Virus record (IMG/VR): IMGVR_UViG_3300023199_000204
Span: 248,001-312,000 of that record
Strand: one strand, 5' to 3'
DNA: 64,000 bases
Of this stretch, positions 20,965-64,000 are shown one piece after another (position 1 is the first letter of the stretch; every line of letters begins with the position of its first letter). The position numbers and the translations under genes were made by a program. Under the pieces are notes generated by a model. That model did no database searches and had not been told where the DNA came from. It worked only from the letters and a program-made list of their open reading frames with translations.

Positions 20965-22131
20965 ATGAAATATATAATATTAAGTGATCTTCATTTAGGG
21001 CACAAAGGGATCCAGAATAATGGATTTGTATCTTTACTTTCTAATATTCCAGAGGGTGCGGATGGATATGGCAAGAGTAAGTTAGACAGTTTTTCTACAG
21101 CCATAAAAGATTTTTGTGGAGAAGATAAAGCAGTTTTGATTTTAAATGGTGATTTATTAGAGCTTTCATTAGCGACAATGAGAGATGCTCTTGACAGCTT
21201 TTTAGATGTGATTGCTACAATAAAAGACAATGTAAGTAAAATAATATTAATTGTTGGAAATCACGATCATCATATTTGGTCTTTACATTCAGAGTATAGC
21301 AGGTCATTAAATCATTTACTTTCTGGAGATTTGCCAGCAGTGGGGACGGCTTATAGGACAACGATATTTGCTGAGAAAGCACATCTTTTAGATCCGCTTA
21401 TTAAAAAACAAATTGACGAAAACATTGACTTTAAAGTATCATATCCTTCTTTACGGCTCCATTTAAATAATGGAGATGAACCAGTTTATTGTTATATTAC
21501 ACACGGTCATTTATTGAGTGGATTATATAATTTAACTTCAAGAATACTAAAACCTTTTGCTATTGGTAGAGAAACAGAATATACAATTGCCGAAGTTAAT
21601 TCTGCCTTAATTGAGTTTATGTATTGGTCAGCAGGAGAAATGGGCGATGGGATGGGAGTTGATGGGATCCTTGAGGCAATGTACACGGACTTAGAAAAGG
21701 GAAAGAGTTCTAAAATGAAGGAACTTCTTGTTAATTTATCTAATACATTGTTTCCAGATGGAGTTTTATCGTTTGTCCCAGATGTTTTGGAAAGAAAAAT
21801 ATTTAGTTGGCTAGCAGAAAAGATGTCCAAGAAACTATCAAAGGATAGAGATAAGCCCATATCCTCAGTTGATAGATACGCTTCTTTGGAAGATACTAGA
21901 AATTACGTTAATGATTGGACTAACAATGTTGTTGATTTATCACCTCCATATAAAAGAATGATTTTTGTTTCTGGTCATACGCATCGTGCTGACGAGTTTA
22001 ATATTAATGAAACTGTTAAATATTATAACACTGGATCGTGGTTATTAGAGCCAGCCCATCCTGAACCAGAGTCAAGACTCCTTTTTATAGAGGACGGAGA
22101 AGAACTGAAAATTGAGTTTAAGGTAATATAA
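20965..22131 (+). CDS. calcineurin-like metallophosphoesterase
   Basis: SDLHLG, NGDLLE, GNHDH, THGH, GHTH, NTGSW. Confidence 0.9.
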   Translation: MKYIILSDLHLGHKGIQNNGFVSLLSNIPEGADGYGKSKLDSFSTAIKDFCGEDKAVLILNGDLLELSLATMRDALDSFLDVIATIKDNVSKIILIVGNHDHHIWSLHSEYSRSLNHLLSGDLPAVGTAYRTTIFAEKAHLLDPLIKKQIDENIDFKVSYPSLRLHLNNGDEPVYCYITHGHLLSGLYNLTSRILKPFAIGRETEYTIAEVNSALIEFMYWSAGEMGDGMGVDGILEAMYTDLEKGKSSKMKELLVNLSNTLFPDGVLSFVPDVLERKIFSWLAEKMSKKLSKDRDKPISSVDRYASLEDTRNYVNDWTNNVVDLSPPYKRMIFVSGHTHRADEFNINETVKYYNTGSWLLEPAHPEPESRLLFIEDGEELKIEFKVI

Positions 22132-29115: not shown

Positions 29116-29248
29116 GGATGCGTTGAGCAGTGCGGTGAGCTTGGCGGGCTGTGGGGATTGATTAAATGGTAATTTTAATGAGTTCGATTCTCACATTCCC
29201 AAAACCCCGTGGTCTTCGGGCTTGTAGGTTCGATTCCTACCGCATCCA
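29116..29248 (+). tRNA. tRNA-Tyr(GUA) interrupted in the anticodon by a ~50-nt tRNA-like insert
   Basis: GGATGCG/CGCATCC-A, long variable arm with TTCG loop; removing 29153-29202 gives GCGGG-CTGTAAC-CCCGT. Confidence 0.75.
29153..29202 (+). ncRNA. nested minimal tRNA-like element (acceptor + one hairpin + T arm, no anticodon arm)
   Basis: (T)GGGGAT/ATTCCC(A); ATTAA..TTAAT hairpin; TGAG-TTCGATT-CTCA. Confidence 0.7.
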
Positions 29249-30352: not shown

Positions 30353-31048
30353 ATAAGGAGAAAGGAATGTCTAATAAATAAAAAAGAAGTTCTAGAGGTG
30401 TTAGAAAGGTATGAAGAGATTAAAAGTGAAATTAAAGGAACATTCTTAATTTATGCTAAATATTGTGGTATTTAAGTTTCAGAAATAGTTCATATTGAGG
30501 TAAACGAAAGTGAGGTTGAAGTAGAATACACTGAGCCAGGCGGATGTAGCTGTTGCTATACTAGTAGATACTCTACTTTTCCTATTAGTTATTTATGGGA
30601 AGAGAATTGGATTGAAAAGCTAAAAGCTAAGCATCAAGTGGAATTAGCCGAAAAAATTAAAAAGAAAGAAGAGGAAAAAGAAAGAAGAGAAAGAGAGCAA
30701 CTAGAGCTGGATAAAAAGCTTTATAAAAGATTAAAAGAAAAATTCGGCTAAAATAATCTTAGAGGCAGATTCCACTGGGTGAGTTAATAAGGAAAGTAAA
30801 ATAATGAATTTCGCAAAATGGTTTAGAGAACAGCAAAAAGACGCTAAGGCTGTAATTAATTTAACAAAACTTGATGTCAGAGATGAGCCTTGTCTTACCC
30901 TAAAGGGCAATAATAAATATAAAGTTTTGATAACACAAAATACATTTATTTCGAATGTATGTGGAATTTTCGTTGAAGATGTAAATTATGTATTAATGGA
31001 GGCACAAAATGAAGAAACGAAAACGTAAATAAAAATCAGGCAAACTAT

Positions 31049-31195
31049 GCCTCCGTGGTGTTAATGGCTTAGCACACTGGATTTTGCGAAAGACATTTGG
31101 TATGTAGATGTTAGAGGCAACTCTTTGGTCTAAGTGAGTTCGATTCTCACCTTTCGCGTAATCCATGAAGTGTGGGTTCGAATCCTACCGGGGCT
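31049..31195 (+). tRNA. tRNA-Lys(UUU) interrupted in the anticodon by a 73-nt tRNA-like insert
   Basis: GCCTCCG..GTGT/GCAC D arm; removing 31086-31158 gives CTGGA-TTTTTAA-TCCAT; T arm GTGGG-TTCGAAT-CCTAC; 3' acceptor G-run one base short. Confidence 0.72.
31086..31158 (+). ncRNA. nested tRNA-like element without a canonical anticodon loop
   Basis: Perfect GCGAAAG/CTTTCGC+G, D-like ATTT/AGAT, perfect GTGAG-TTCGATT-CTCAC. Confidence 0.8.
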
Positions 31196-32114
31196 ATAAA
31201 ATAGATTAGATAAGAGGATTTAGTTAATATTTATTATTAAAAGGAAAGGAAAAAATGAAAAGTAAAATTTTATCAGTTGTATTGTCAGTTTGTTTGTTAA
31301 TTGGAACGGTATTTGCGACTTCTGCCTGTGGAGACGACTTAGTTGTTAATGGAAAAAACATATAAAACCAAAGGTATTTTTACTCAAGATGAAAAAGACC
31401 CTTGTATTAAATATAGTTTAATTGCTGGAAATGTTGCTTGGGCAATTATATTTTTTGGAACAGCAGTTGCTCCAGTTTATTTTTTTGGATTTTCTTTATG
31501 GGAGCCAGCGAGAGTTAAGTCAGAATGCGAAAAGAAATAAAGTCTCCAAAAATAGGAATGGGAGCAACCATTCAACTTTGGTCAGATAGAATTGCTGGAA
31601 CAATCGTGAGAATTACAAAAACTAAAAAGACAATCTTTATTCAAGAAGATGCGGCATCAAGAATTGATAGAAACGGAATAAGTGAAAGCCAAAGATATGA
31701 ATATACTCCAAATTCTAAAGGAAATGTATATCGTGCTTCTTTAAGAAAATATGGAAGGTTTAGAGTATCAAAAACCAATGAATTAGTTAGTATTAGAGTA
31801 AGACGCAAGTTTTACGATTATTTTTTTTAAGGACATTATGGGAAGATTAAAAGTAGCTAGTTATATTGAAGAGTGGTTGAAATTAGAATGCCCACACTGT
31901 GAAGAGTCAAATTGGCTTCAATCATCATTTGGAGACATATTAGACCCTGATGTTGATGCGATTAGATGCCTATCCTGTAAAGAGTTGTTTCTTGTTTGTG
32001 AAAGAGAGGAATGGGAGAGTGAAGATAATTTATACATAGAAGATGGAGTGACTGATCCGTCTGAAATAAAAGAGTTAGATTTTTATAATGAAGAGATTTG
32101 GAATGATTAAATAA

Positions 32115-32187
32115 GGGTTTGTGGTGTCAATGTAGCATATTCGCCTCTTAAGCGAAAAGGTGATGGGTTCAAGTCCCTCCGAGCCTA
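32115..32187 (+). tRNA. tRNA-Lys(CUU)
   Basis: GGGTTTG/CGAGCCT, TTCGC-CTCTTAA-GCGAA. Confidence 0.85.
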
Positions 32188-32859: not shown

Positions 32860-32933
32860 TCAGCTGTCTTCTAACTGGATAAGATCCCTGGCTTTGAACT
32901 AGGGCAATGTGGGTTCGAATCCCATTATTCCCG
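32860..32933 (+). pseudogene. tRNA-Gln(UUG) body with non-complementary acceptor strands
   Basis: Good D, anticodon (CCTGG-CTTTGAA-CTAGG) and T arms, but TCAGCTG vs TATTCCC. Confidence 0.6.
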
Positions 32934-51197: not shown

Positions 51198-51271
51198 GCC
51201 TCGGTGGTGTAATCGGTTTAGCATTCGAGTTTCATAAGCTTGAGGTCTGAGTTCAAATCTCAGCTGAGGTA
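51198..51271 (+). tRNA. tRNA with CAU anticodon (elongator Met or Ile2)
   Basis: GCCTCGG/CTGAGGT, CGAGT-TTCATAA-GCTTG. Confidence 0.85.
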
Positions 51272-51906
51272 TATATATAGGAGAAGAAATGCCAAGACTT
51301 AAGGATTGGGGAATAAGACAAGGATATTTGGTAGACATTGTTTACGGAATAATAAGACTTTCTGGAATTGTTTATGATCATCATAGGTTAGAAGATGGAA
51401 AGGACATAATTACATCTTCGTTAATGACTCTTGATTTAAAAAACAGAAAAGCTACAACAAAATCTGGAAGTGAATATATTCTTGAAGGAGACCCAGATCC
51501 TGAGTATATACAGTTTTTAAAAGACAAAGGCTTATGGGATAAATATAAAGATGAAATTTATCCCCCAACACTAGGACTTAATTAAAAATAATGATTATAA
51601 AAAAATAGAAAGTAATATACCTTCCTATTGGAAAATAGGATATTCAAGAGCATTTAATAATTTGTATATAAAAAGCGAATATTATAATAATAGGATTGAT
51701 AGGTTTGGAACTCTTTATTTAAATGAGAAAGATTTGATAAGAGAGAATGGACCTATTAATATTGGAAACTTAGCAGTTCCTTTAAGACCCTTACATAACG
51801 CTCACAAAATAGTATTTATTAGCAAAGACAATGAAGAATTTATTTTAAAAGATAGAACAAATACTCAAGAAGTATCTTCAAGATATTTTAGATAAAGGAA
51901 AAGAAA

Positions 51907-53214
51907 ATGTCAGTAATAGCAATGGAAGTAATGGAGGCGTTTGATCATCCAAATGCTGATTCATTAAGAGTTTATAAATTTATAGCACCAGGGCAAGCAT
52001 CAAAAGAGCGTCCACTTCAAATAGTTGCGAATCTTGAAAATGTGTATGAGGTTGGCGATGTCGTTGCTGTTGCGTTGGTTGGAACTGTTTTAAAAGATGA
52101 AACCACTATCAAAAAAGTAAATCTTCGTGGAGAGTCTTCATACGGAATGGCTTTGGGAAAAGTCGATGCCAAGGTCGGCGAAAATCTTTCTGATAAATAT
52201 GAGGCAGAAGAGATAAAACCTTCAATGGCAGGATTTATTAAATGGCCGAGCATTTCAGGTTTTCATAATATTAGAAAATCATTAGAGAAAATAAAAGAAT
52301 ATGAGGGAGGTGCTTTTACTTATCCAAAACTTGATTACAAATGTAAAGTGAAATTACACGGAACGAATTCGGGTGTTCATTTACATTCTGATGGAACATT
52401 TGCTGTTCAAAGTCGTTCAAGAATATTAACTCCTGAGCACGATAATTTGGGGTTTTATAGATGGACGCAGGATAGGAAAAATCATTTTGAAAAGTGGGCA
52501 AAATCTGCCGGTAGAAATTTAACCGTATTCGGAGAATTTTGTGGAGAGGGAATTCAAAAAGGCGTTGCTGTATCCAAGATAGAGAGGAAGATATTTGTTG
52601 TTTTCGCAGTCCAAGTTGATGAAAATACACTAATAACCGATCCAGAAGAAATCAATGGTTATGTTTTGGAACACGAAGATATAAAAGTTTTACCTTGGTA
52701 TGATGCTAATTTCTTCATTGATTATTCAAATACTGATTTGTTAAGGGCTGTTATTAAGGATATAAATGCTGAGGTAGATAAAGTAGAAAAAGAAGACCCT
52801 TGGGTAAAAGAAGTTTTTGGAGTGAGTGGTATAGGCGAAGGGTTAGTTTTTTATCCTTATAAAGAATATGATAGGGATAGAATATCTTTATTAATGTTTA
52901 AAGCGAAAGGAGAGAAGCATCAGGTTGCTGTTCAAAATAAGCCAGTCCAACTAGATCCAGAAGTATTAAATTCAATTAATGAGTTCTCTGATAAATTCAT
53001 TACAGAGGCAAGACTTGAACAAGGAGTTGCTGAAGGTTGTGATGGCAAGTTGGAAATGAAAATGATGGGTAAGTTTATTAAATGGATTATGTCTGATGTT
53101 AATAAAGAATCAAAAGACGAATTGGAAGCTTCGGGACTTAAATGGAAACAAGTAGGAAAAGAAGTTTCAAGTCGAGCCAGAAATTGGTATAAACAAAAGG
53201 TGGAAGAAATATAA
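51907..53214 (+). CDS. Rnl2-type ATP-dependent RNA ligase with N-terminal tRNA-binding OB-fold
   Basis: N-terminal HPNADSL..VGDVVAVALVG..LRGESSYGM (PheT/Trbp111-like); KLHGTN motif I, FGEF, GEGLV, FKAK, ITEARL. Confidence 0.85.
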   Translation: MSVIAMEVMEAFDHPNADSLRVYKFIAPGQASKERPLQIVANLENVYEVGDVVAVALVGTVLKDETTIKKVNLRGESSYGMALGKVDAKVGENLSDKYEAEEIKPSMAGFIKWPSISGFHNIRKSLEKIKEYEGGAFTYPKLDYKCKVKLHGTNSGVHLHSDGTFAVQSRSRILTPEHDNLGFYRWTQDRKNHFEKWAKSAGRNLTVFGEFCGEGIQKGVAVSKIERKIFVVFAVQVDENTLITDPEEINGYVLEHEDIKVLPWYDANFFIDYSNTDLLRAVIKDINAEVDKVEKEDPWVKEVFGVSGIGEGLVFYPYKEYDRDRISLLMFKAKGEKHQVAVQNKPVQLDPEVLNSINEFSDKFITEARLEQGVAEGCDGKLEMKMMGKFIKWIMSDVNKESKDELEASGLKWKQVGKEVSSRARNWYKQKVEEI

Positions 53215-53543: not shown

Positions 53544-53616
53544 GCCAGCGTAGCTCAATGGTAGTAGCAACGGTTTTGTAAACCGTAGGTTGTAGGTTCA
53601 AGTCCTATCGCTGGCT
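53544..53616 (+). tRNA. tRNA-Thr(UGU)
   Basis: GCCAGCG/CGCTGGC, ACGGT-TTTGTAA-ACCGT. Confidence 0.93.
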
Positions 53617-55295: not shown

Positions 55296-56151
55296 TTTTA
55301 CATACTTAGTATTAGGTTCGGAAGGTCAGATAGGAAATCCTCTTGTTAATTGGATAAAGAGGCAAGGGGATACTGTTATAGAACACGACATTAAGCGAAC
55401 AGATTTGGAAGATATAAGGTTGCTTCCTCCTAATAGTGAGAGAAAAGAGCATCTTTTAAGGAATAATATTAAAAATTGTGATTTTATATTTTTTTTAGCT
55501 TGGGATGTTGGAGGAAGTAAATATTTATCAAATGCTGAAAAGTCTTATGATTTAGTTAATAATAATATACTGATTATGAAATCAGTATTTTCCCTCCTTA
55601 AAGAATATAATAAACCTTTTATATTTACTTCAAGTCAAATGTCAAATATGATACATTCCACTTATGGCAACACAAAGCTAATAGGCGAAAAATATACTAG
55701 AGCACTAAATGGTCTTTCTGTTAAGTTGTGGAATGTATATGGTTATGAGAAGGTAGATAAAAAATCTCACGTTATAACTGACTTTATTAATATGGCGTTG
55801 GAAGACAATCACATTAATATGAGAACTGATGGTTCAGAAGAAAGGCAATTTCTATATGTAGAAGATTGTTGTAATGCCCTTTACACTTTAAGTAAATCAT
55901 ATAATAAAATATCTAGAGAACAAGATTATCATATCTCAAGTGGCGAGTGGCTTTCTATAGAAAAAATAGCATCAATAATAAGTAATTTAACTAACTCAAA
56001 ATATACAAAAGGTTCGTATGTAGATAATGTTCAGATGAATATGAAACTAGAACCAAATGACTCTATGAAGAATATTTGGAATCCTAAATATAATATAAAA
56101 GAGGGGATTGAAATTCTTATAAAAAAAATTAAATTGGAGCTTAATAAATGA
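55276..56151 (+). CDS. NAD-dependent epimerase/dehydratase
   Basis: GSEGQIG Rossmann motif, FTSS, YGNTK, NVYG, RQFLYVED. Confidence 0.88.
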   Translation: MLKITNNFTYLVLGSEGQIGNPLVNWIKRQGDTVIEHDIKRTDLEDIRLLPPNSERKEHLLRNNIKNCDFIFFLAWDVGGSKYLSNAEKSYDLVNNNILIMKSVFSLLKEYNKPFIFTSSQMSNMIHSTYGNTKLIGEKYTRALNGLSVKLWNVYGYEKVDKKSHVITDFINMALEDNHINMRTDGSEERQFLYVEDCCNALYTLSKSYNKISREQDYHISSGEWLSIEKIASIISNLTNSKYTKGSYVDNVQMNMKLEPNDSMKNIWNPKYNIKEGIEILIKKIKLELNK

Positions 56152-63693: not shown

Positions 63694-64000
63694 GGGGACG
63701 AAATGGATTCGACAGAGGCGACAAAGATAAATAAAGCAAGTAAGGGAATGTCTATTTTCTCTTTGAAAAATATAGGCAAAAATAAGTAACGAAAATTACG
63801 CACTTGCTGCCTAATTAGGTAGCACATCTGAAGTTTTCTCTCACTCGTGACGGAACTTCAAGATGTCAAATGAACGAGGTAATAATTATTCTTTTAGCGA
63901 TTGGGAATAATTATGAAATTTTAATTGCTTCGTAATTTAGTAGCTTGTTTATGGGCGACTTTATTATTAAATTAAATCATAAACTAAACTTGTAGATGTC
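63694..64000 (+). ncRNA. ssrA: tmRNA, 3' end truncated by the window
   Basis: 5' GGGGACGAAATGGATTCGACAG; internal tag ORF 63776-63814 reading AKISNENYALAA*. Confidence 0.9.

What the first reader, a model, noticed from the sequence alone, without database searches (positions are those of the whole stretch)
51907..53214. Rnl2-type RNA ligase carrying its own tRNA-binding OB domain: candidate splicing/repair ligase
Seen: an N-terminal PheT/Trbp111-like OB fold joined to a KxHGxN nucleotidyltransferase, located between the last two tRNA genes. Established: Rnl2 enzymes join 3'-OH to 5'-P in nicked duplex-like RNA, and phage ligases repair nuclease-cut tRNAs. No obvious polynucleotide kinase occurs in the window, which fits substrates that need no end-healing, such as RNase P/RNase Z products. 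The metallophosphoesterase at 20965 could heal cyclic-phosphate ends. Inference: this enzyme joins the halves of the nested Lys and Tyr tRNAs and/or repairs cleaved tRNAs.
Basis: partly seen in the sequence, partly recalled or inferred. Interest (0 to 1): 0.7.

Follow-up and report, generated by a model that had tools for sequence, protein, structure and literature searches.

The report
Phage RNA ligase with tRNA-end-binding domain
A huge phage encodes an intact RNA-joining enzyme fused to a domain that normally grips tRNA ends; it is a real, uncharacterised variant of known RNA ligases, but comparison across genomes gives no support for the idea that it splices the phage's two intron-bearing tRNAs.

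Summary
ORF 51907-53214 (+, 435 aa) encodes three parts: an N-terminal Trbp111/PheRS-beta-B2-type OB fold (PF01588), an Rnl2-like nucleotidyltransferase with all catalytic motifs (K149-L-H-G-T-N), and an Rnl2-like helical C domain. It lies between tRNA-Met and tRNA-Thr in a 316-kb, 32% GC huge phage. The two "nested" tRNAs are also real: Tyr at 29116-29248 and Lys at 31048-31197. Each carries a tRNA-like intron between anticodon positions 35 and 36.

The architecture is not unique. More than 1,700 homologues exist, mostly in cyanobacteria and Myxococcota, plus four related huge phages. An N-terminal OB joined to a ligase core is the defining layout of the characterised Rnl5 family (DraRnl/NgrRnl), where the OB assists adenylylation. 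This protein scores below the curated cut-offs for both Rnl2 and Rnl5, so it is an unnamed hybrid family.

The splicing link is unsupported:
- Five of eight phages with such introns lack this ligase type.
- A complete relative has the ligase but no intron.
- No nested tRNA was confirmed in 40 ligase-bearing bacterial genomes.
- Ligases are near-universal in these phages anyway.

The most likely role is sealing 3'-OH/5'-P breaks in tRNA. Splicing remains possible (about 0.2).

The parts
51907..53214 (+). Complete ligase ORF, 435 aa including the stop codon
   Evidence: It aligns from residue 1 to the end with homologues of 425-450 aa.
51894..51900 (+). Shine-Dalgarno-like AAAGGAA upstream of the ATG
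   Evidence: Read directly from the sequence.
51907..52194 (+). N-terminal OB fold (aa 1-96) of Trbp111/PheRS-beta-B2 type (PF01588)
   Evidence: Pfam E 4.7e-8. PDB sequence hits to PheRS beta residues 45-122. Structural match to tRNA-binding protein 3bu2 at Z 13.7, rmsd 1.5 A, and to the PheRS-beta B2 domain at 39-40% identity.
52195..52227 (+). Flexible linker (aa 97-107; pLDDT below 50 at aa 103-106)
   Evidence: AlphaFold2 model.
52228..52926 (+). Nucleotidyltransferase domain (aa 108-340) with motifs I, III, IIIa, IV and V
   Evidence: T4 Rnl2 Z 16.5 and T. brucei REL1 Z 15.6. Motif alignment. Invariant K149, G152, N154, E210, E311, K332 and K334, and nearly invariant F233.
52351..52353 (+). 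Codon of K149, the predicted AMP-accepting lysine of motif I
   Evidence: Aligns to the Lys of EKIHGTN in T4 Rnl2. Invariant in the family.
52927..53211 (+). C-terminal helical domain (aa 341-435), Rnl2-C-like
   Evidence: The HMM alignment runs on to T4 Rnl2 residue 297-301. PF18043 T4_Rnl2_C hits the orthologues from G001 and G002. Helices at aa 357-434 in the model.
51198..51271 (+). Flanking tRNA-Met (context only)
53544..53616 (+). Flanking tRNA-Thr(UGU) (context only)
29116..29248 (+). Intron-bearing tRNA-Tyr(GUA). The intron is 29153-29202 (50 nt, tRNA-like, no anticodon arm). Proposed substrate; the link to the ligase is unproven.
   Evidence: Alignment to the intron-less Tyr tRNAs of G002 and G003 places the insert between positions 35 and 36. 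The 3' half is 85% identical to the Aeromonas phage tRNA-Tyr.
31049..31197 (+). Intron-bearing tRNA-Lys(UUU). The intron is 31086-31158 (73 nt, tRNA-like, with a GCAA hairpin in place of the anticodon arm). Proposed substrate; the link to the ligase is unproven.
   Evidence: Removing the inner element plus its discriminator base gives Lys(ttt) with loop TTTTTAA.

Best explanation
The ORF encodes an active ATP-dependent RNA ligase that joins 3'-OH to 5'-PO4 ends. It belongs to an unnamed family that combines a PheRS-beta-B2/Trbp111-type OB fold, an Rnl2-like nucleotidyltransferase and an Rnl2-like C domain.

Shown: the gene is intact, all catalytic motifs are present, the three-domain fold is predicted with confidence, orthologues occur in related huge phages, and there are more than 1,700 mostly bacterial homologues.

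Inferred mechanism: K149 is adenylylated by ATP, AMP is passed to a 5'-phosphate, and the neighbouring 3'-OH attacks to seal the break. The C domain helps recognise the break, as it does in T4 Rnl2. The N-terminal OB does one or both of two things. It may hold the single-stranded 3' CCA tail of a tRNA, as shown for Trbp111, and so direct the enzyme to tRNAs. It may also help the adenylylation step, as the N-terminal OB of Rnl5 enzymes does.

In this phage the enzyme most likely keeps tRNAs whole by resealing breaks made by host nucleases. The phage carries about 35 tRNAs, a tmRNA, a second small ligase and a Pnk-like kinase. Joining the exons of the two intron-bearing tRNAs would be a special case of the same chemistry. 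That role is possible but not indicated by the comparative data.
For: Domains and motifs. Fold: pLDDT 89.9. NgrRnl aligns over the OB and the ligase core (Foldseek E 3e-13; Z about 15 over residues 1-339). T4 Rnl2 matches the core at Z 16.5. The OB matches tRNA-binding proteins at Z 13.7. The family is conserved: 1,783 hits, the best at 50% identity with both Pfam domains, and 111 matching stretches in the species-representative genomes, the 80 listed being mostly cyanobacteria and Myxococcota. Orthologues occur in phages G001-G004. G001-G003 share capsid, sheath and many core genes with this one. The motif LRGxxSxGM, with R74, S78 and M81 invariant or nearly so, corresponds to residues that hold the terminal C75 and A76 in Trbp111 and Arc1p (PMC11286949). 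Role of the Rnl5 OB: PMC7261155 and PMC1807946. Phage context of tRNAs plus ligases as a repair kit: PMC7824862. Pnk-like kinase and second ligase in the genome.
Against: No biochemical data exist for any member of the family. In Rnl5 enzymes the N-terminal OB has a catalytic role and the known substrates are nicked duplexes, not tRNAs. The PheRS B2 domain itself is not known to hold tRNA. The match of the CA-pocket residues was made by motif alignment, not by a tool. Bacterial homologues stand alone without repair partners in the three neighbourhoods examined. No 3'-phosphatase for end-healing was identified. The complex prediction with a tRNA was not run by the tool.
Confidence: 0.55

Rival explanations
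1. Splicing ligase. Host RNase P cuts at the 5' end of the tRNA-like intron and a second nuclease cuts after it. This leaves a 3'-OH on the 5' exon and a 5'-phosphate on the 3' exon. The ligase then joins them to make functional tRNA-Tyr and tRNA-Lys.
For: Both intron-bearing tRNAs are real, and ARAGORN finds no other Tyr or Lys(UUU) gene in the genome. The inner elements have acceptor and T arms but no anticodon arm, so they look like processing handles. For the Lys tRNA, a cut before the inner element plus a cut after its discriminator gives exactly a 7-nt UUUUUAA loop. No RtcB was found in the nine phages with such introns that were searched, and no EndA in the five searched, so an ATP-dependent ligase fits. 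All six complete genomes with such introns, and this phage, carry at least one PF09414 ligase. Six of eight carry one with an N-terminal OB, either PF01588 or PF21189. The genome has only two candidate ligases.
Against: Five of eight intron-bearing genomes lack this ligase type, and G020 (84% complete) shows no ligase of any of three families. G003 (100% complete) and G001 have the ligase and no such intron. Intron-free complete relatives carry ligases at a similar rate: three of four have PF09414 and the fourth has RtcB. In 40 bacterial genomes with the ligase, matches to the two-T-loop pattern are no more frequent than the control, and none of the 12 inspected has paired T stems. The tail between the inner acceptor stem and the 3' exon is 1, 2 or 5 nt, so a cut after the discriminator does not give a 7-nt loop in most cases. 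No RNA data were available.
Confidence: 0.2
2. Rnl5-like general nick-sealing ligase with no tRNA specificity. The OB serves only the adenylylation step, and the enzyme seals RNA strands in duplexes, such as RNA:DNA hybrids or structured RNAs, during replication or after damage.
For: The best whole-chain structural match is NgrRnl, covering the OB and the core. TIGR02306 (DraRnl) aligns across the OB-core junction, aa 47-258. The Rnl5 OB was originally recognised as PheRS-B2-like and acts on the ATP gamma-phosphate. OB-less and OB-bearing relatives are intermixed in the tree, which suggests the OB is an accessory rather than a specificity switch. In G001-G003 the gene is not next to tRNA genes.
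Against: Unlike the Rnl5 OB (PF21189), this OB scores above the Pfam cut-off for the tRNA-binding family and is 39-40% identical to the PheRS B2 domain. It keeps the S/M/R pocket residues. The protein also keeps an Rnl2-type C domain that could by itself serve nick recognition.
Confidence: 0.2
3. Inactive or decaying gene, or a chance ORF.
For: None found.
Against: A 435-aa open frame in a 32% GC genome. It aligns full-length at 42-50% identity to many homologues, and every catalytic residue is kept.
Confidence: 0.02

Closest known systems
Rnl5 family (Deinococcus radiodurans DraRnl, Naegleria gruberi NgrRnl; TIGR02306; OB = PF21189)
   Same: An N-terminal OB fold, originally recognised as PheRS-beta-B2-like, is followed by the nucleotidyltransferase. 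NgrRnl is the best whole-chain structural match. The ATP-dependent 3'-OH/5'-PO4 chemistry is the same.
   Different: Rnl5 enzymes end soon after motif V and have no C domain; this protein has about 95 further helical residues. Its OB matches PF01588, not PF21189. It scores 30 bits against the TIGR02306 cut-off of 151.
Rnl2 family (T4 Rnl2; kinetoplastid REL1; TIGR02307)
   Same: The closest core domain (Z 16.5, 22-24% identity). Motifs I, III, IV and V align, and the C-terminal helical domain aligns in part.
   Different: Rnl2 has no N-terminal domain. This protein scores 21.7 bits against a cut-off of 197. T4_Rnl2_C is detected in the G001 and G002 orthologues but not in the window protein itself.
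Trbp111 / EMAPII / Arc1p / PheRS-beta B2 OB fold (PF01588)
   Same: The same fold at rmsd 1.5-2.4 A, 32-40% identity, with HPNAD and LRGxxSxGM motifs. Trbp111 binds only the 3'-terminal CA of tRNA (PMC11286949).
   Different: Here the fold is fused to a ligase rather than free-standing or attached to an aminoacyl-tRNA synthetase. Binding was not tested.
T4 Pnkp plus Rnl1 tRNA repair pathway
   Same: A phage-encoded ligase together with a Pnk-like kinase in a tRNA-rich phage.
   Different: The ligase family is different (no PF09511 in this genome). The kinase is a 160-aa P-loop domain without a recognised phosphatase. No anticodon nuclease of the host is known.
'Enigmatic' tRNA introns of Lak megaphages (Devoto et al. 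2019, PMC6784885)
   Same: Phage tRNAs, including Tyr(GTA), are interrupted by short introns, and one of those introns 'may itself encode a tRNA'.
   Different: That paper proposed no splicing enzymes and does not mention an RNA ligase. The phages here are a different, environmental clade.

Membership tests
Covalent nucleotidyltransferase / ATP-dependent RNA ligase superfamily (PF09414) | Motif I KxxGxN lysine plus motifs III, IIIa, IV and V | tested here: met
   PF09414 at 51 bits against a cut-off of 27. K149, E210, E311, K332 and K334 are invariant and F233 is nearly invariant; motifs I, III, IV and V align to T4 Rnl2.
Rnl2 family (T4 Rnl2) | Curated whole-protein model TIGR02307 | tested here: not met
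   21.7 bits against a cut-off of 197.15.
Rnl2 family (T4 Rnl2) | Rnl2-specific all-helical C-terminal domain | tested here: inconclusive
   The HMM alignment reaches T4 Rnl2 residue 297-301. PF18043 hits the G001 and G002 orthologues (E 7.5e-4 and 5e-6) but not the window protein at E<=1. The structural aligners matched only the core.
Rnl2 family (T4 Rnl2) | The nucleotidyltransferase is the N-terminal domain, with no preceding module | tested here: not met
   About 107 residues of OB fold and linker precede the core.
Rnl5 family (DraRnl/NgrRnl) | N-terminal OB fold linked to a C-terminal nucleotidyltransferase | tested here: met
   NgrRnl aligns over model residues 1-339, Z about 15. Foldseek E 3e-13.
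Rnl5 family (DraRnl/NgrRnl) | No domain after the nucleotidyltransferase | tested here: not met
   Residues 341-435 form a helical domain.
Rnl5 family (DraRnl/NgrRnl) | Curated model TIGR02306 and OB model PF21189 | tested here: not met
   30 bits against a cut-off of 151.15. No PF21189 match in this genome.
tRNA-binding OB domain (PF01588) | Pfam gathering score and fold | tested here: met
   33.5 bits against 27. Z 12-14 with rmsd 1.5-2.4 A to 3bu2 and the PheRS B2 domain.
tRNA-binding OB domain (PF01588) | Binding of the tRNA 3'-terminal CA through the S/M/R(F) pocket | not testable with these tools
   S78 and R74 are invariant and M81 nearly invariant. Equivalence to Trbp111 S82/M85/F78 was inferred by motif alignment from PMC11286949. 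The complex prediction was not run.
tRNA-splicing ligase (functional class) | Intron-bearing tRNAs in the same genome | tested here: met
   Two such tRNAs, at 29116-29248 and 31049-31197.
tRNA-splicing ligase (functional class) | Co-occurrence of the ligase with such introns across genomes | tested here: not met
   2 of 8 intron-bearing phages have this type. G003 has it without an intron. No nested tRNA was confirmed in 40 ligase-bearing bacteria.
tRNA-splicing ligase (functional class) | Spliced product and exon ends of matching chemistry in vivo | not testable with these tools
   No RNA run was listed.
Phage Pnkp-plus-ligase tRNA repair system | Polynucleotide 5'-kinase and 3'-phosphatase encoded alongside | tested here: inconclusive
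   An AAA_33 kinase matches phrog 'polynucleotide kinase' at 7e-11, 4.1 kb before the window. No phosphatase was recognised. The phosphoesterase at 20965 is only weakly typed.

The most novel reading that the evidence does not exclude
Huge phages run a protein-dependent tRNA splicing pathway not known in bacteria. tRNA-like introns sit between anticodon positions 35 and 36 of tRNAs such as Lys, Tyr and Asn. Host RNase P and a second nuclease cut them out, and the exons are rejoined by phage ligases that carry an N-terminal OB fold: this PF01588 type here and in G002, and the Rnl5 type in others. Production of these tRNAs would then depend on a phage enzyme.
Probability: 0.2. Interest if true: 0.85.

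Novelty: new variant of a known kind. Interest (0 to 1): 0.5.

Why it matters
Six families of ATP-dependent RNA ligase have been characterised, each defined by the module attached to the catalytic core. This protein represents a widespread, untested combination: the N-terminal OB of the Rnl5 layout, in its tRNA-end-binding PF01588 form, together with the core and C domain of Rnl2. It occurs in cyanobacteria, Myxococcota and a clade of huge phages. A simple set of assays could show whether an OB that grips the tRNA CCA tail retargets a nick-sealing ligase to tRNAs. The enzyme is also one of only two candidates in this phage for joining the exons of tRNA-like introns. The processing of such introns has been unexplained since they were first seen in Lak megaphages in 2019. 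The present data neither establish nor exclude that role.

Tried and rejected
- Transcript evidence: no RNA run was listed for the intron region. The second showed only identical DNA contigs in three samples.
- Complex prediction of the ligase with a tRNA was not run by the tool, so it counts as no evidence.
- A single-sequence search of viral contigs found nothing; a profile search was needed.
- blastn of the two nested tRNAs against GenBank phages gave only a partial Tyr 3'-half match, or nothing.
- ARAGORN in -io mode produced long chimeric 'introns' spanning whole tRNA arrays. These were rejected as artefacts.
- Archaeal-type splicing was considered. No EndA was found in five intron-bearing phages. 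RtcB was found only in G034 among the ten phage genomes searched.
- A terminase Pfam search to find relatives failed, so the major head protein was used instead.
- Promoter and terminator scans around the gene were at chance level.
- The ligase tree did not resolve whether the window protein groups with the other phage copies or with bacterial ones. It gave no reliable direction of transfer.
- Gene neighbourhoods of three bacterial homologues showed no conserved partner.
- The second G010 and G006 matches to the T-loop-pair pattern were tRNAs with long variable regions, not nested tRNAs. The G034 match was an odd RNA with three T-loops beside a tRNA with a hairpin in its anticodon loop, left unresolved.
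Full report
**Setting.** The window is bases 248001-312000 of a single 316,473-bp viral contig with 32% GC. It carries a major head protein and a tail sheath. ARAGORN finds 32 tRNAs in the genome, and a tmRNA lies at the window's end. It shares head, sheath and dozens of other genes at 30-72% identity with three other huge-phage contigs, G001-G003, of 266-459 kb. It is therefore a member of a clade of huge tailed phages.

**The observation.** ORF 51907-53214 (+) is open for 435 codons and is preceded by AAAGGAA.
- Pfam finds PF01588 tRNA_bind at aa 7-87 (E 4.7e-8) and PF09414 RNA_ligase at aa 146-332 (E 2.4e-13), both above the curated cut-offs. phrog_548 'RNA ligase' covers aa 110-433.
- Sequence searches of solved structures hit the B2 domain of PheRS beta with aa 3-93 and T4 Rnl2 with aa 143-401.
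- The alignment to T4 Rnl2 pairs KVKLHGTN with EKIHGTN (motif I, lysine 149), FGEFCG with FGEFAG (motif III), GEGLV with AEGYV (motif IV) and FKAKG with IKCKN (motif V). These residues are invariant in 27 homologues.
- An AlphaFold2 model (mean pLDDT 89.9) shows a beta-barrel at aa 1-96, a disordered linker, a mixed core at aa 108-340 and a helical domain to aa 435.

The position 'between the last two tRNAs' is true for the window but carries little weight. The tRNA island spans 40 kb with genes scattered through it, and in G001-G003 the orthologue is not beside tRNAs.

**What kind of ligase.** Foldseek ranks Naegleria gruberi RNA ligase first (E 3e-13, about 380 columns) and full-length T4 Rnl2 next (E 6e-11).
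- The second aligner gives T4 Rnl2 Z 16.5 for the core alone. NgrRnl scores Z about 15 over residues 1-339, which covers the OB and the core.
- The OB alone scores Z 12-14 against tRNA-binding protein 3bu2 and PheRS B2, with rmsd 1.5-2.4 A and up to 40% identity.
- NgrRnl and DraRnl define the Rnl5 family. Its hallmark is an N-terminal OB fold, first recognised as PheRS-B2-like, joined to the ligase core with no C domain (PMC1807946; PMC7261155).
- In NgrRnl the OB contacts the ATP gamma-phosphate, and deleting it cripples adenylylation.
- The window protein has this layout and, in addition, a C-terminal helical domain. That domain aligns in part to the Rnl2 C domain, and PF18043 hits two orthologues.
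- The protein is far below NCBI's cut-offs for both Rnl5 (30 against 151 bits) and Rnl2 (21.7 against 197).

I therefore file it as an unnamed hybrid family within the Rnl2/Rnl5 superfamily, not as a member of either.

**Distribution.** The big protein search returned 1,783 hits. The best 120 are 45-51% identical over the full length, and nearly all carry both Pfam domains. Those that are named come from cyanobacteria, Myxococcota or 'Deltaproteobacteria'.
- In one genome per species, 111 stretches encode a relative, and the 80 listed show the same taxa.
- Three bacterial neighbourhoods show no conserved partner.
- In viral contigs, five carry the full-length form (G001-G004 and one 43-kb contig). 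About 75 carry an OB-less form starting near residue 105, as do most GenBank phages.
- In a tree, the five other phage copies form a clade (98/96 support). The window protein's place is unresolved, and OB-less forms are intermixed, so the OB behaves as a movable accessory.

**What the OB might do.** A 2024 co-crystal study showed that the PF01588 fold of Trbp111 binds tRNA only through its single-stranded 3'-terminal CA. It uses S82, M85, R75 and F78, and Arc1p uses S278, M281 and R274 (PMC11286949). The family motif here is LRGxxSxGM, with R74 and S78 invariant and M81 nearly so. By motif alignment these match that pocket; this is my inference, not a tool result. The OB may thus anchor the CCA tail of a tRNA, may assist adenylylation as in Rnl5, or may do both.

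**The nested tRNAs.** A scan for two paired T-arms less than 70 nt apart finds exactly two places in the genome. These are the same two that ARAGORN reports with introns.
- Aligned to the intron-less Tyr tRNAs of G002 and G003, the first (29116-29248) is a type-II tRNA. It carries a 50-nt insert between CTGT and AAC, that is, between positions 35 and 36 of a GUA anticodon. Its 3' half is 85% identical to an Aeromonas phage tRNA-Tyr.
- The second (31049-31197) has a 73-nt insert. Removing the inner element and its discriminator base gives tRNA-Lys(UUU) with loop TTTTTAA, again split between positions 35 and 36.
- Both inserts have an acceptor stem and a T arm (GAGTTCGATTCTCAC in both) but no anticodon arm; the longer one has a GCAA-capped hairpin instead.
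- ARAGORN finds no other Tyr or Lys(UUU) gene in the genome. A plain Lys(CUU) lies at 32115-32187.

Such introns are not new. Lak megaphages were reported in 2019 to have 'enigmatic' tRNA introns, one of which 'may itself encode a tRNA' (PMC6784885). A pattern search of viral contigs found 15 matches, and 14 are true examples of the same design, mostly in contigs of 130-450 kb. The inner helix covaries among them.

**Testing the splicing link.** The chemical argument is sound as established knowledge. RNase P leaves a 3'-OH upstream, and metal-dependent nucleases leave a 5'-phosphate downstream. No EndA was found in the five intron-bearing phages searched, and no RtcB in the nine searched. Three lines of evidence nevertheless fail to tie the introns to this ligase.
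1. Among eight phage genomes with such introns, only G000 and G002 have the PF01588 type. G007, G010, G014 and G017 have an Rnl5-type ligase (PF21189 plus PF09414). G006 has an OB-less form and an Rnl1. G020 (84% complete) shows none of three ligase families.
2. Intron-free complete relatives carry ligases just as often. G003 has the PF01588 type, G032 an Rnl5 type, G021 another PF09414 ligase and G034 an RtcB. N-terminal-OB ligases thus occur in 6 of 8 genomes with introns and 2 of 4 without, which is no signal at these numbers.
3. In 40 bacterial genomes that encode the ligase, the two-T-loop pattern matches no more often than its reversed control, and none of the 12 inspected matches has paired T stems.

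In addition, the tail between the inner acceptor stem and the 3' exon is 1 nt (Lys), 2 nt (Tyr, G020) or 5 nt (the common class). The 'RNase P plus RNase Z' scheme therefore gives a proper loop only for the Lys tRNA. The family as a whole cannot be a dedicated intron ligase. In this phage it may still do the job, since some enzyme must and only two candidates are encoded.

**Other claims.**
- Whether the window itself holds a polynucleotide kinase was not tested for the whole window. A 160-aa AAA_33 kinase that matches a phage 'polynucleotide kinase' family lies 4.1 kb upstream of the window.
- The ORF at 20965 is a calcineurin-like phosphoesterase with weak SbcD-like similarity. A role in healing cyclic phosphate ends is conjecture.

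**Verdict.** The gene is real and almost certainly encodes an active 3'-OH/5'-P RNA ligase of an uncharacterised hybrid family.
- tRNA-directed break sealing is the best reading (0.55).
- Exon joining of the tRNA-like introns is about 0.2.
- A purely Rnl5-like nick sealer without tRNA targeting is about 0.2.

It is a new variant of a known kind and of moderate interest. The interest would be high if the splicing role were shown.

Noticed in passing
window 29116-29248 and 31049-31197; also L146-L160, G002:C1:161483-161605(-), G020:C1:~56000-56150: tRNA-like introns of 44-73 nt sit inside the anticodon (between positions 35 and 36) of phage tRNAs. They form a recurrent family in huge-phage contigs, with a covarying inner helix. 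Several members have type-II (Ser-like) bodies yet would read GUU by the same junction rule, and the 3' cut site is not explained.
   Followed up: partly
window 32115-32187 (+): A tRNA found only by the Rfam model (41.7 bits), with loop CUCUUAA, which reads as Lys(CUU). ARAGORN misses it. A weaker tRNA-like match lies at 32865-32927.
   Followed up: partly
window 63694-64000 (+): A phage-encoded tmRNA (82 bits), cut off by the end of the window.
   Followed up: no
G000:C1:219295-219903 (outside the window; L004:1432-2043): A second, minimal PF09414 ligase of 203 aa (core only). It is conserved in G002 and G003 at 35-38% identity, and is the only other ligase candidate in this genome.
   Followed up: partly
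G000:C1:243399-243881 (4.1 kb before the window; L177:1489-1971): A 160-aa AAA_33 P-loop kinase matching phage 'polynucleotide kinase' and 'RNA ligase'-associated families. It is a possible 5'-end healing enzyme.
   Followed up: partly
G002:C1:148687-148760 and G003:C1:451588-451662: Relatives carry suppressor-type tRNAs (anticodons CUA and UUA), which hints at stop-codon recoding in the clade.
   Followed up: no
G034:C1:40536-40640 (-), L266: An odd RNA with three T-loops next to a tRNA that has a 27-nt hairpin in its anticodon loop. G034 is the only genome of the ten searched that has RtcB.
   Followed up: no
G007:C1:118260-118835 and 120090-120449: The OB-less ligase homologue is split into two pieces about 1.2 kb apart, so an insertion (intron, intein or homing endonuclease) is likely.
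   Followed up: no
whole contig G000: The completeness estimate is given as 18% for a 316-kb contig whose relatives are 266-459 kb. The estimate looks unreliable, or the genome is unusual.
   Followed up: no
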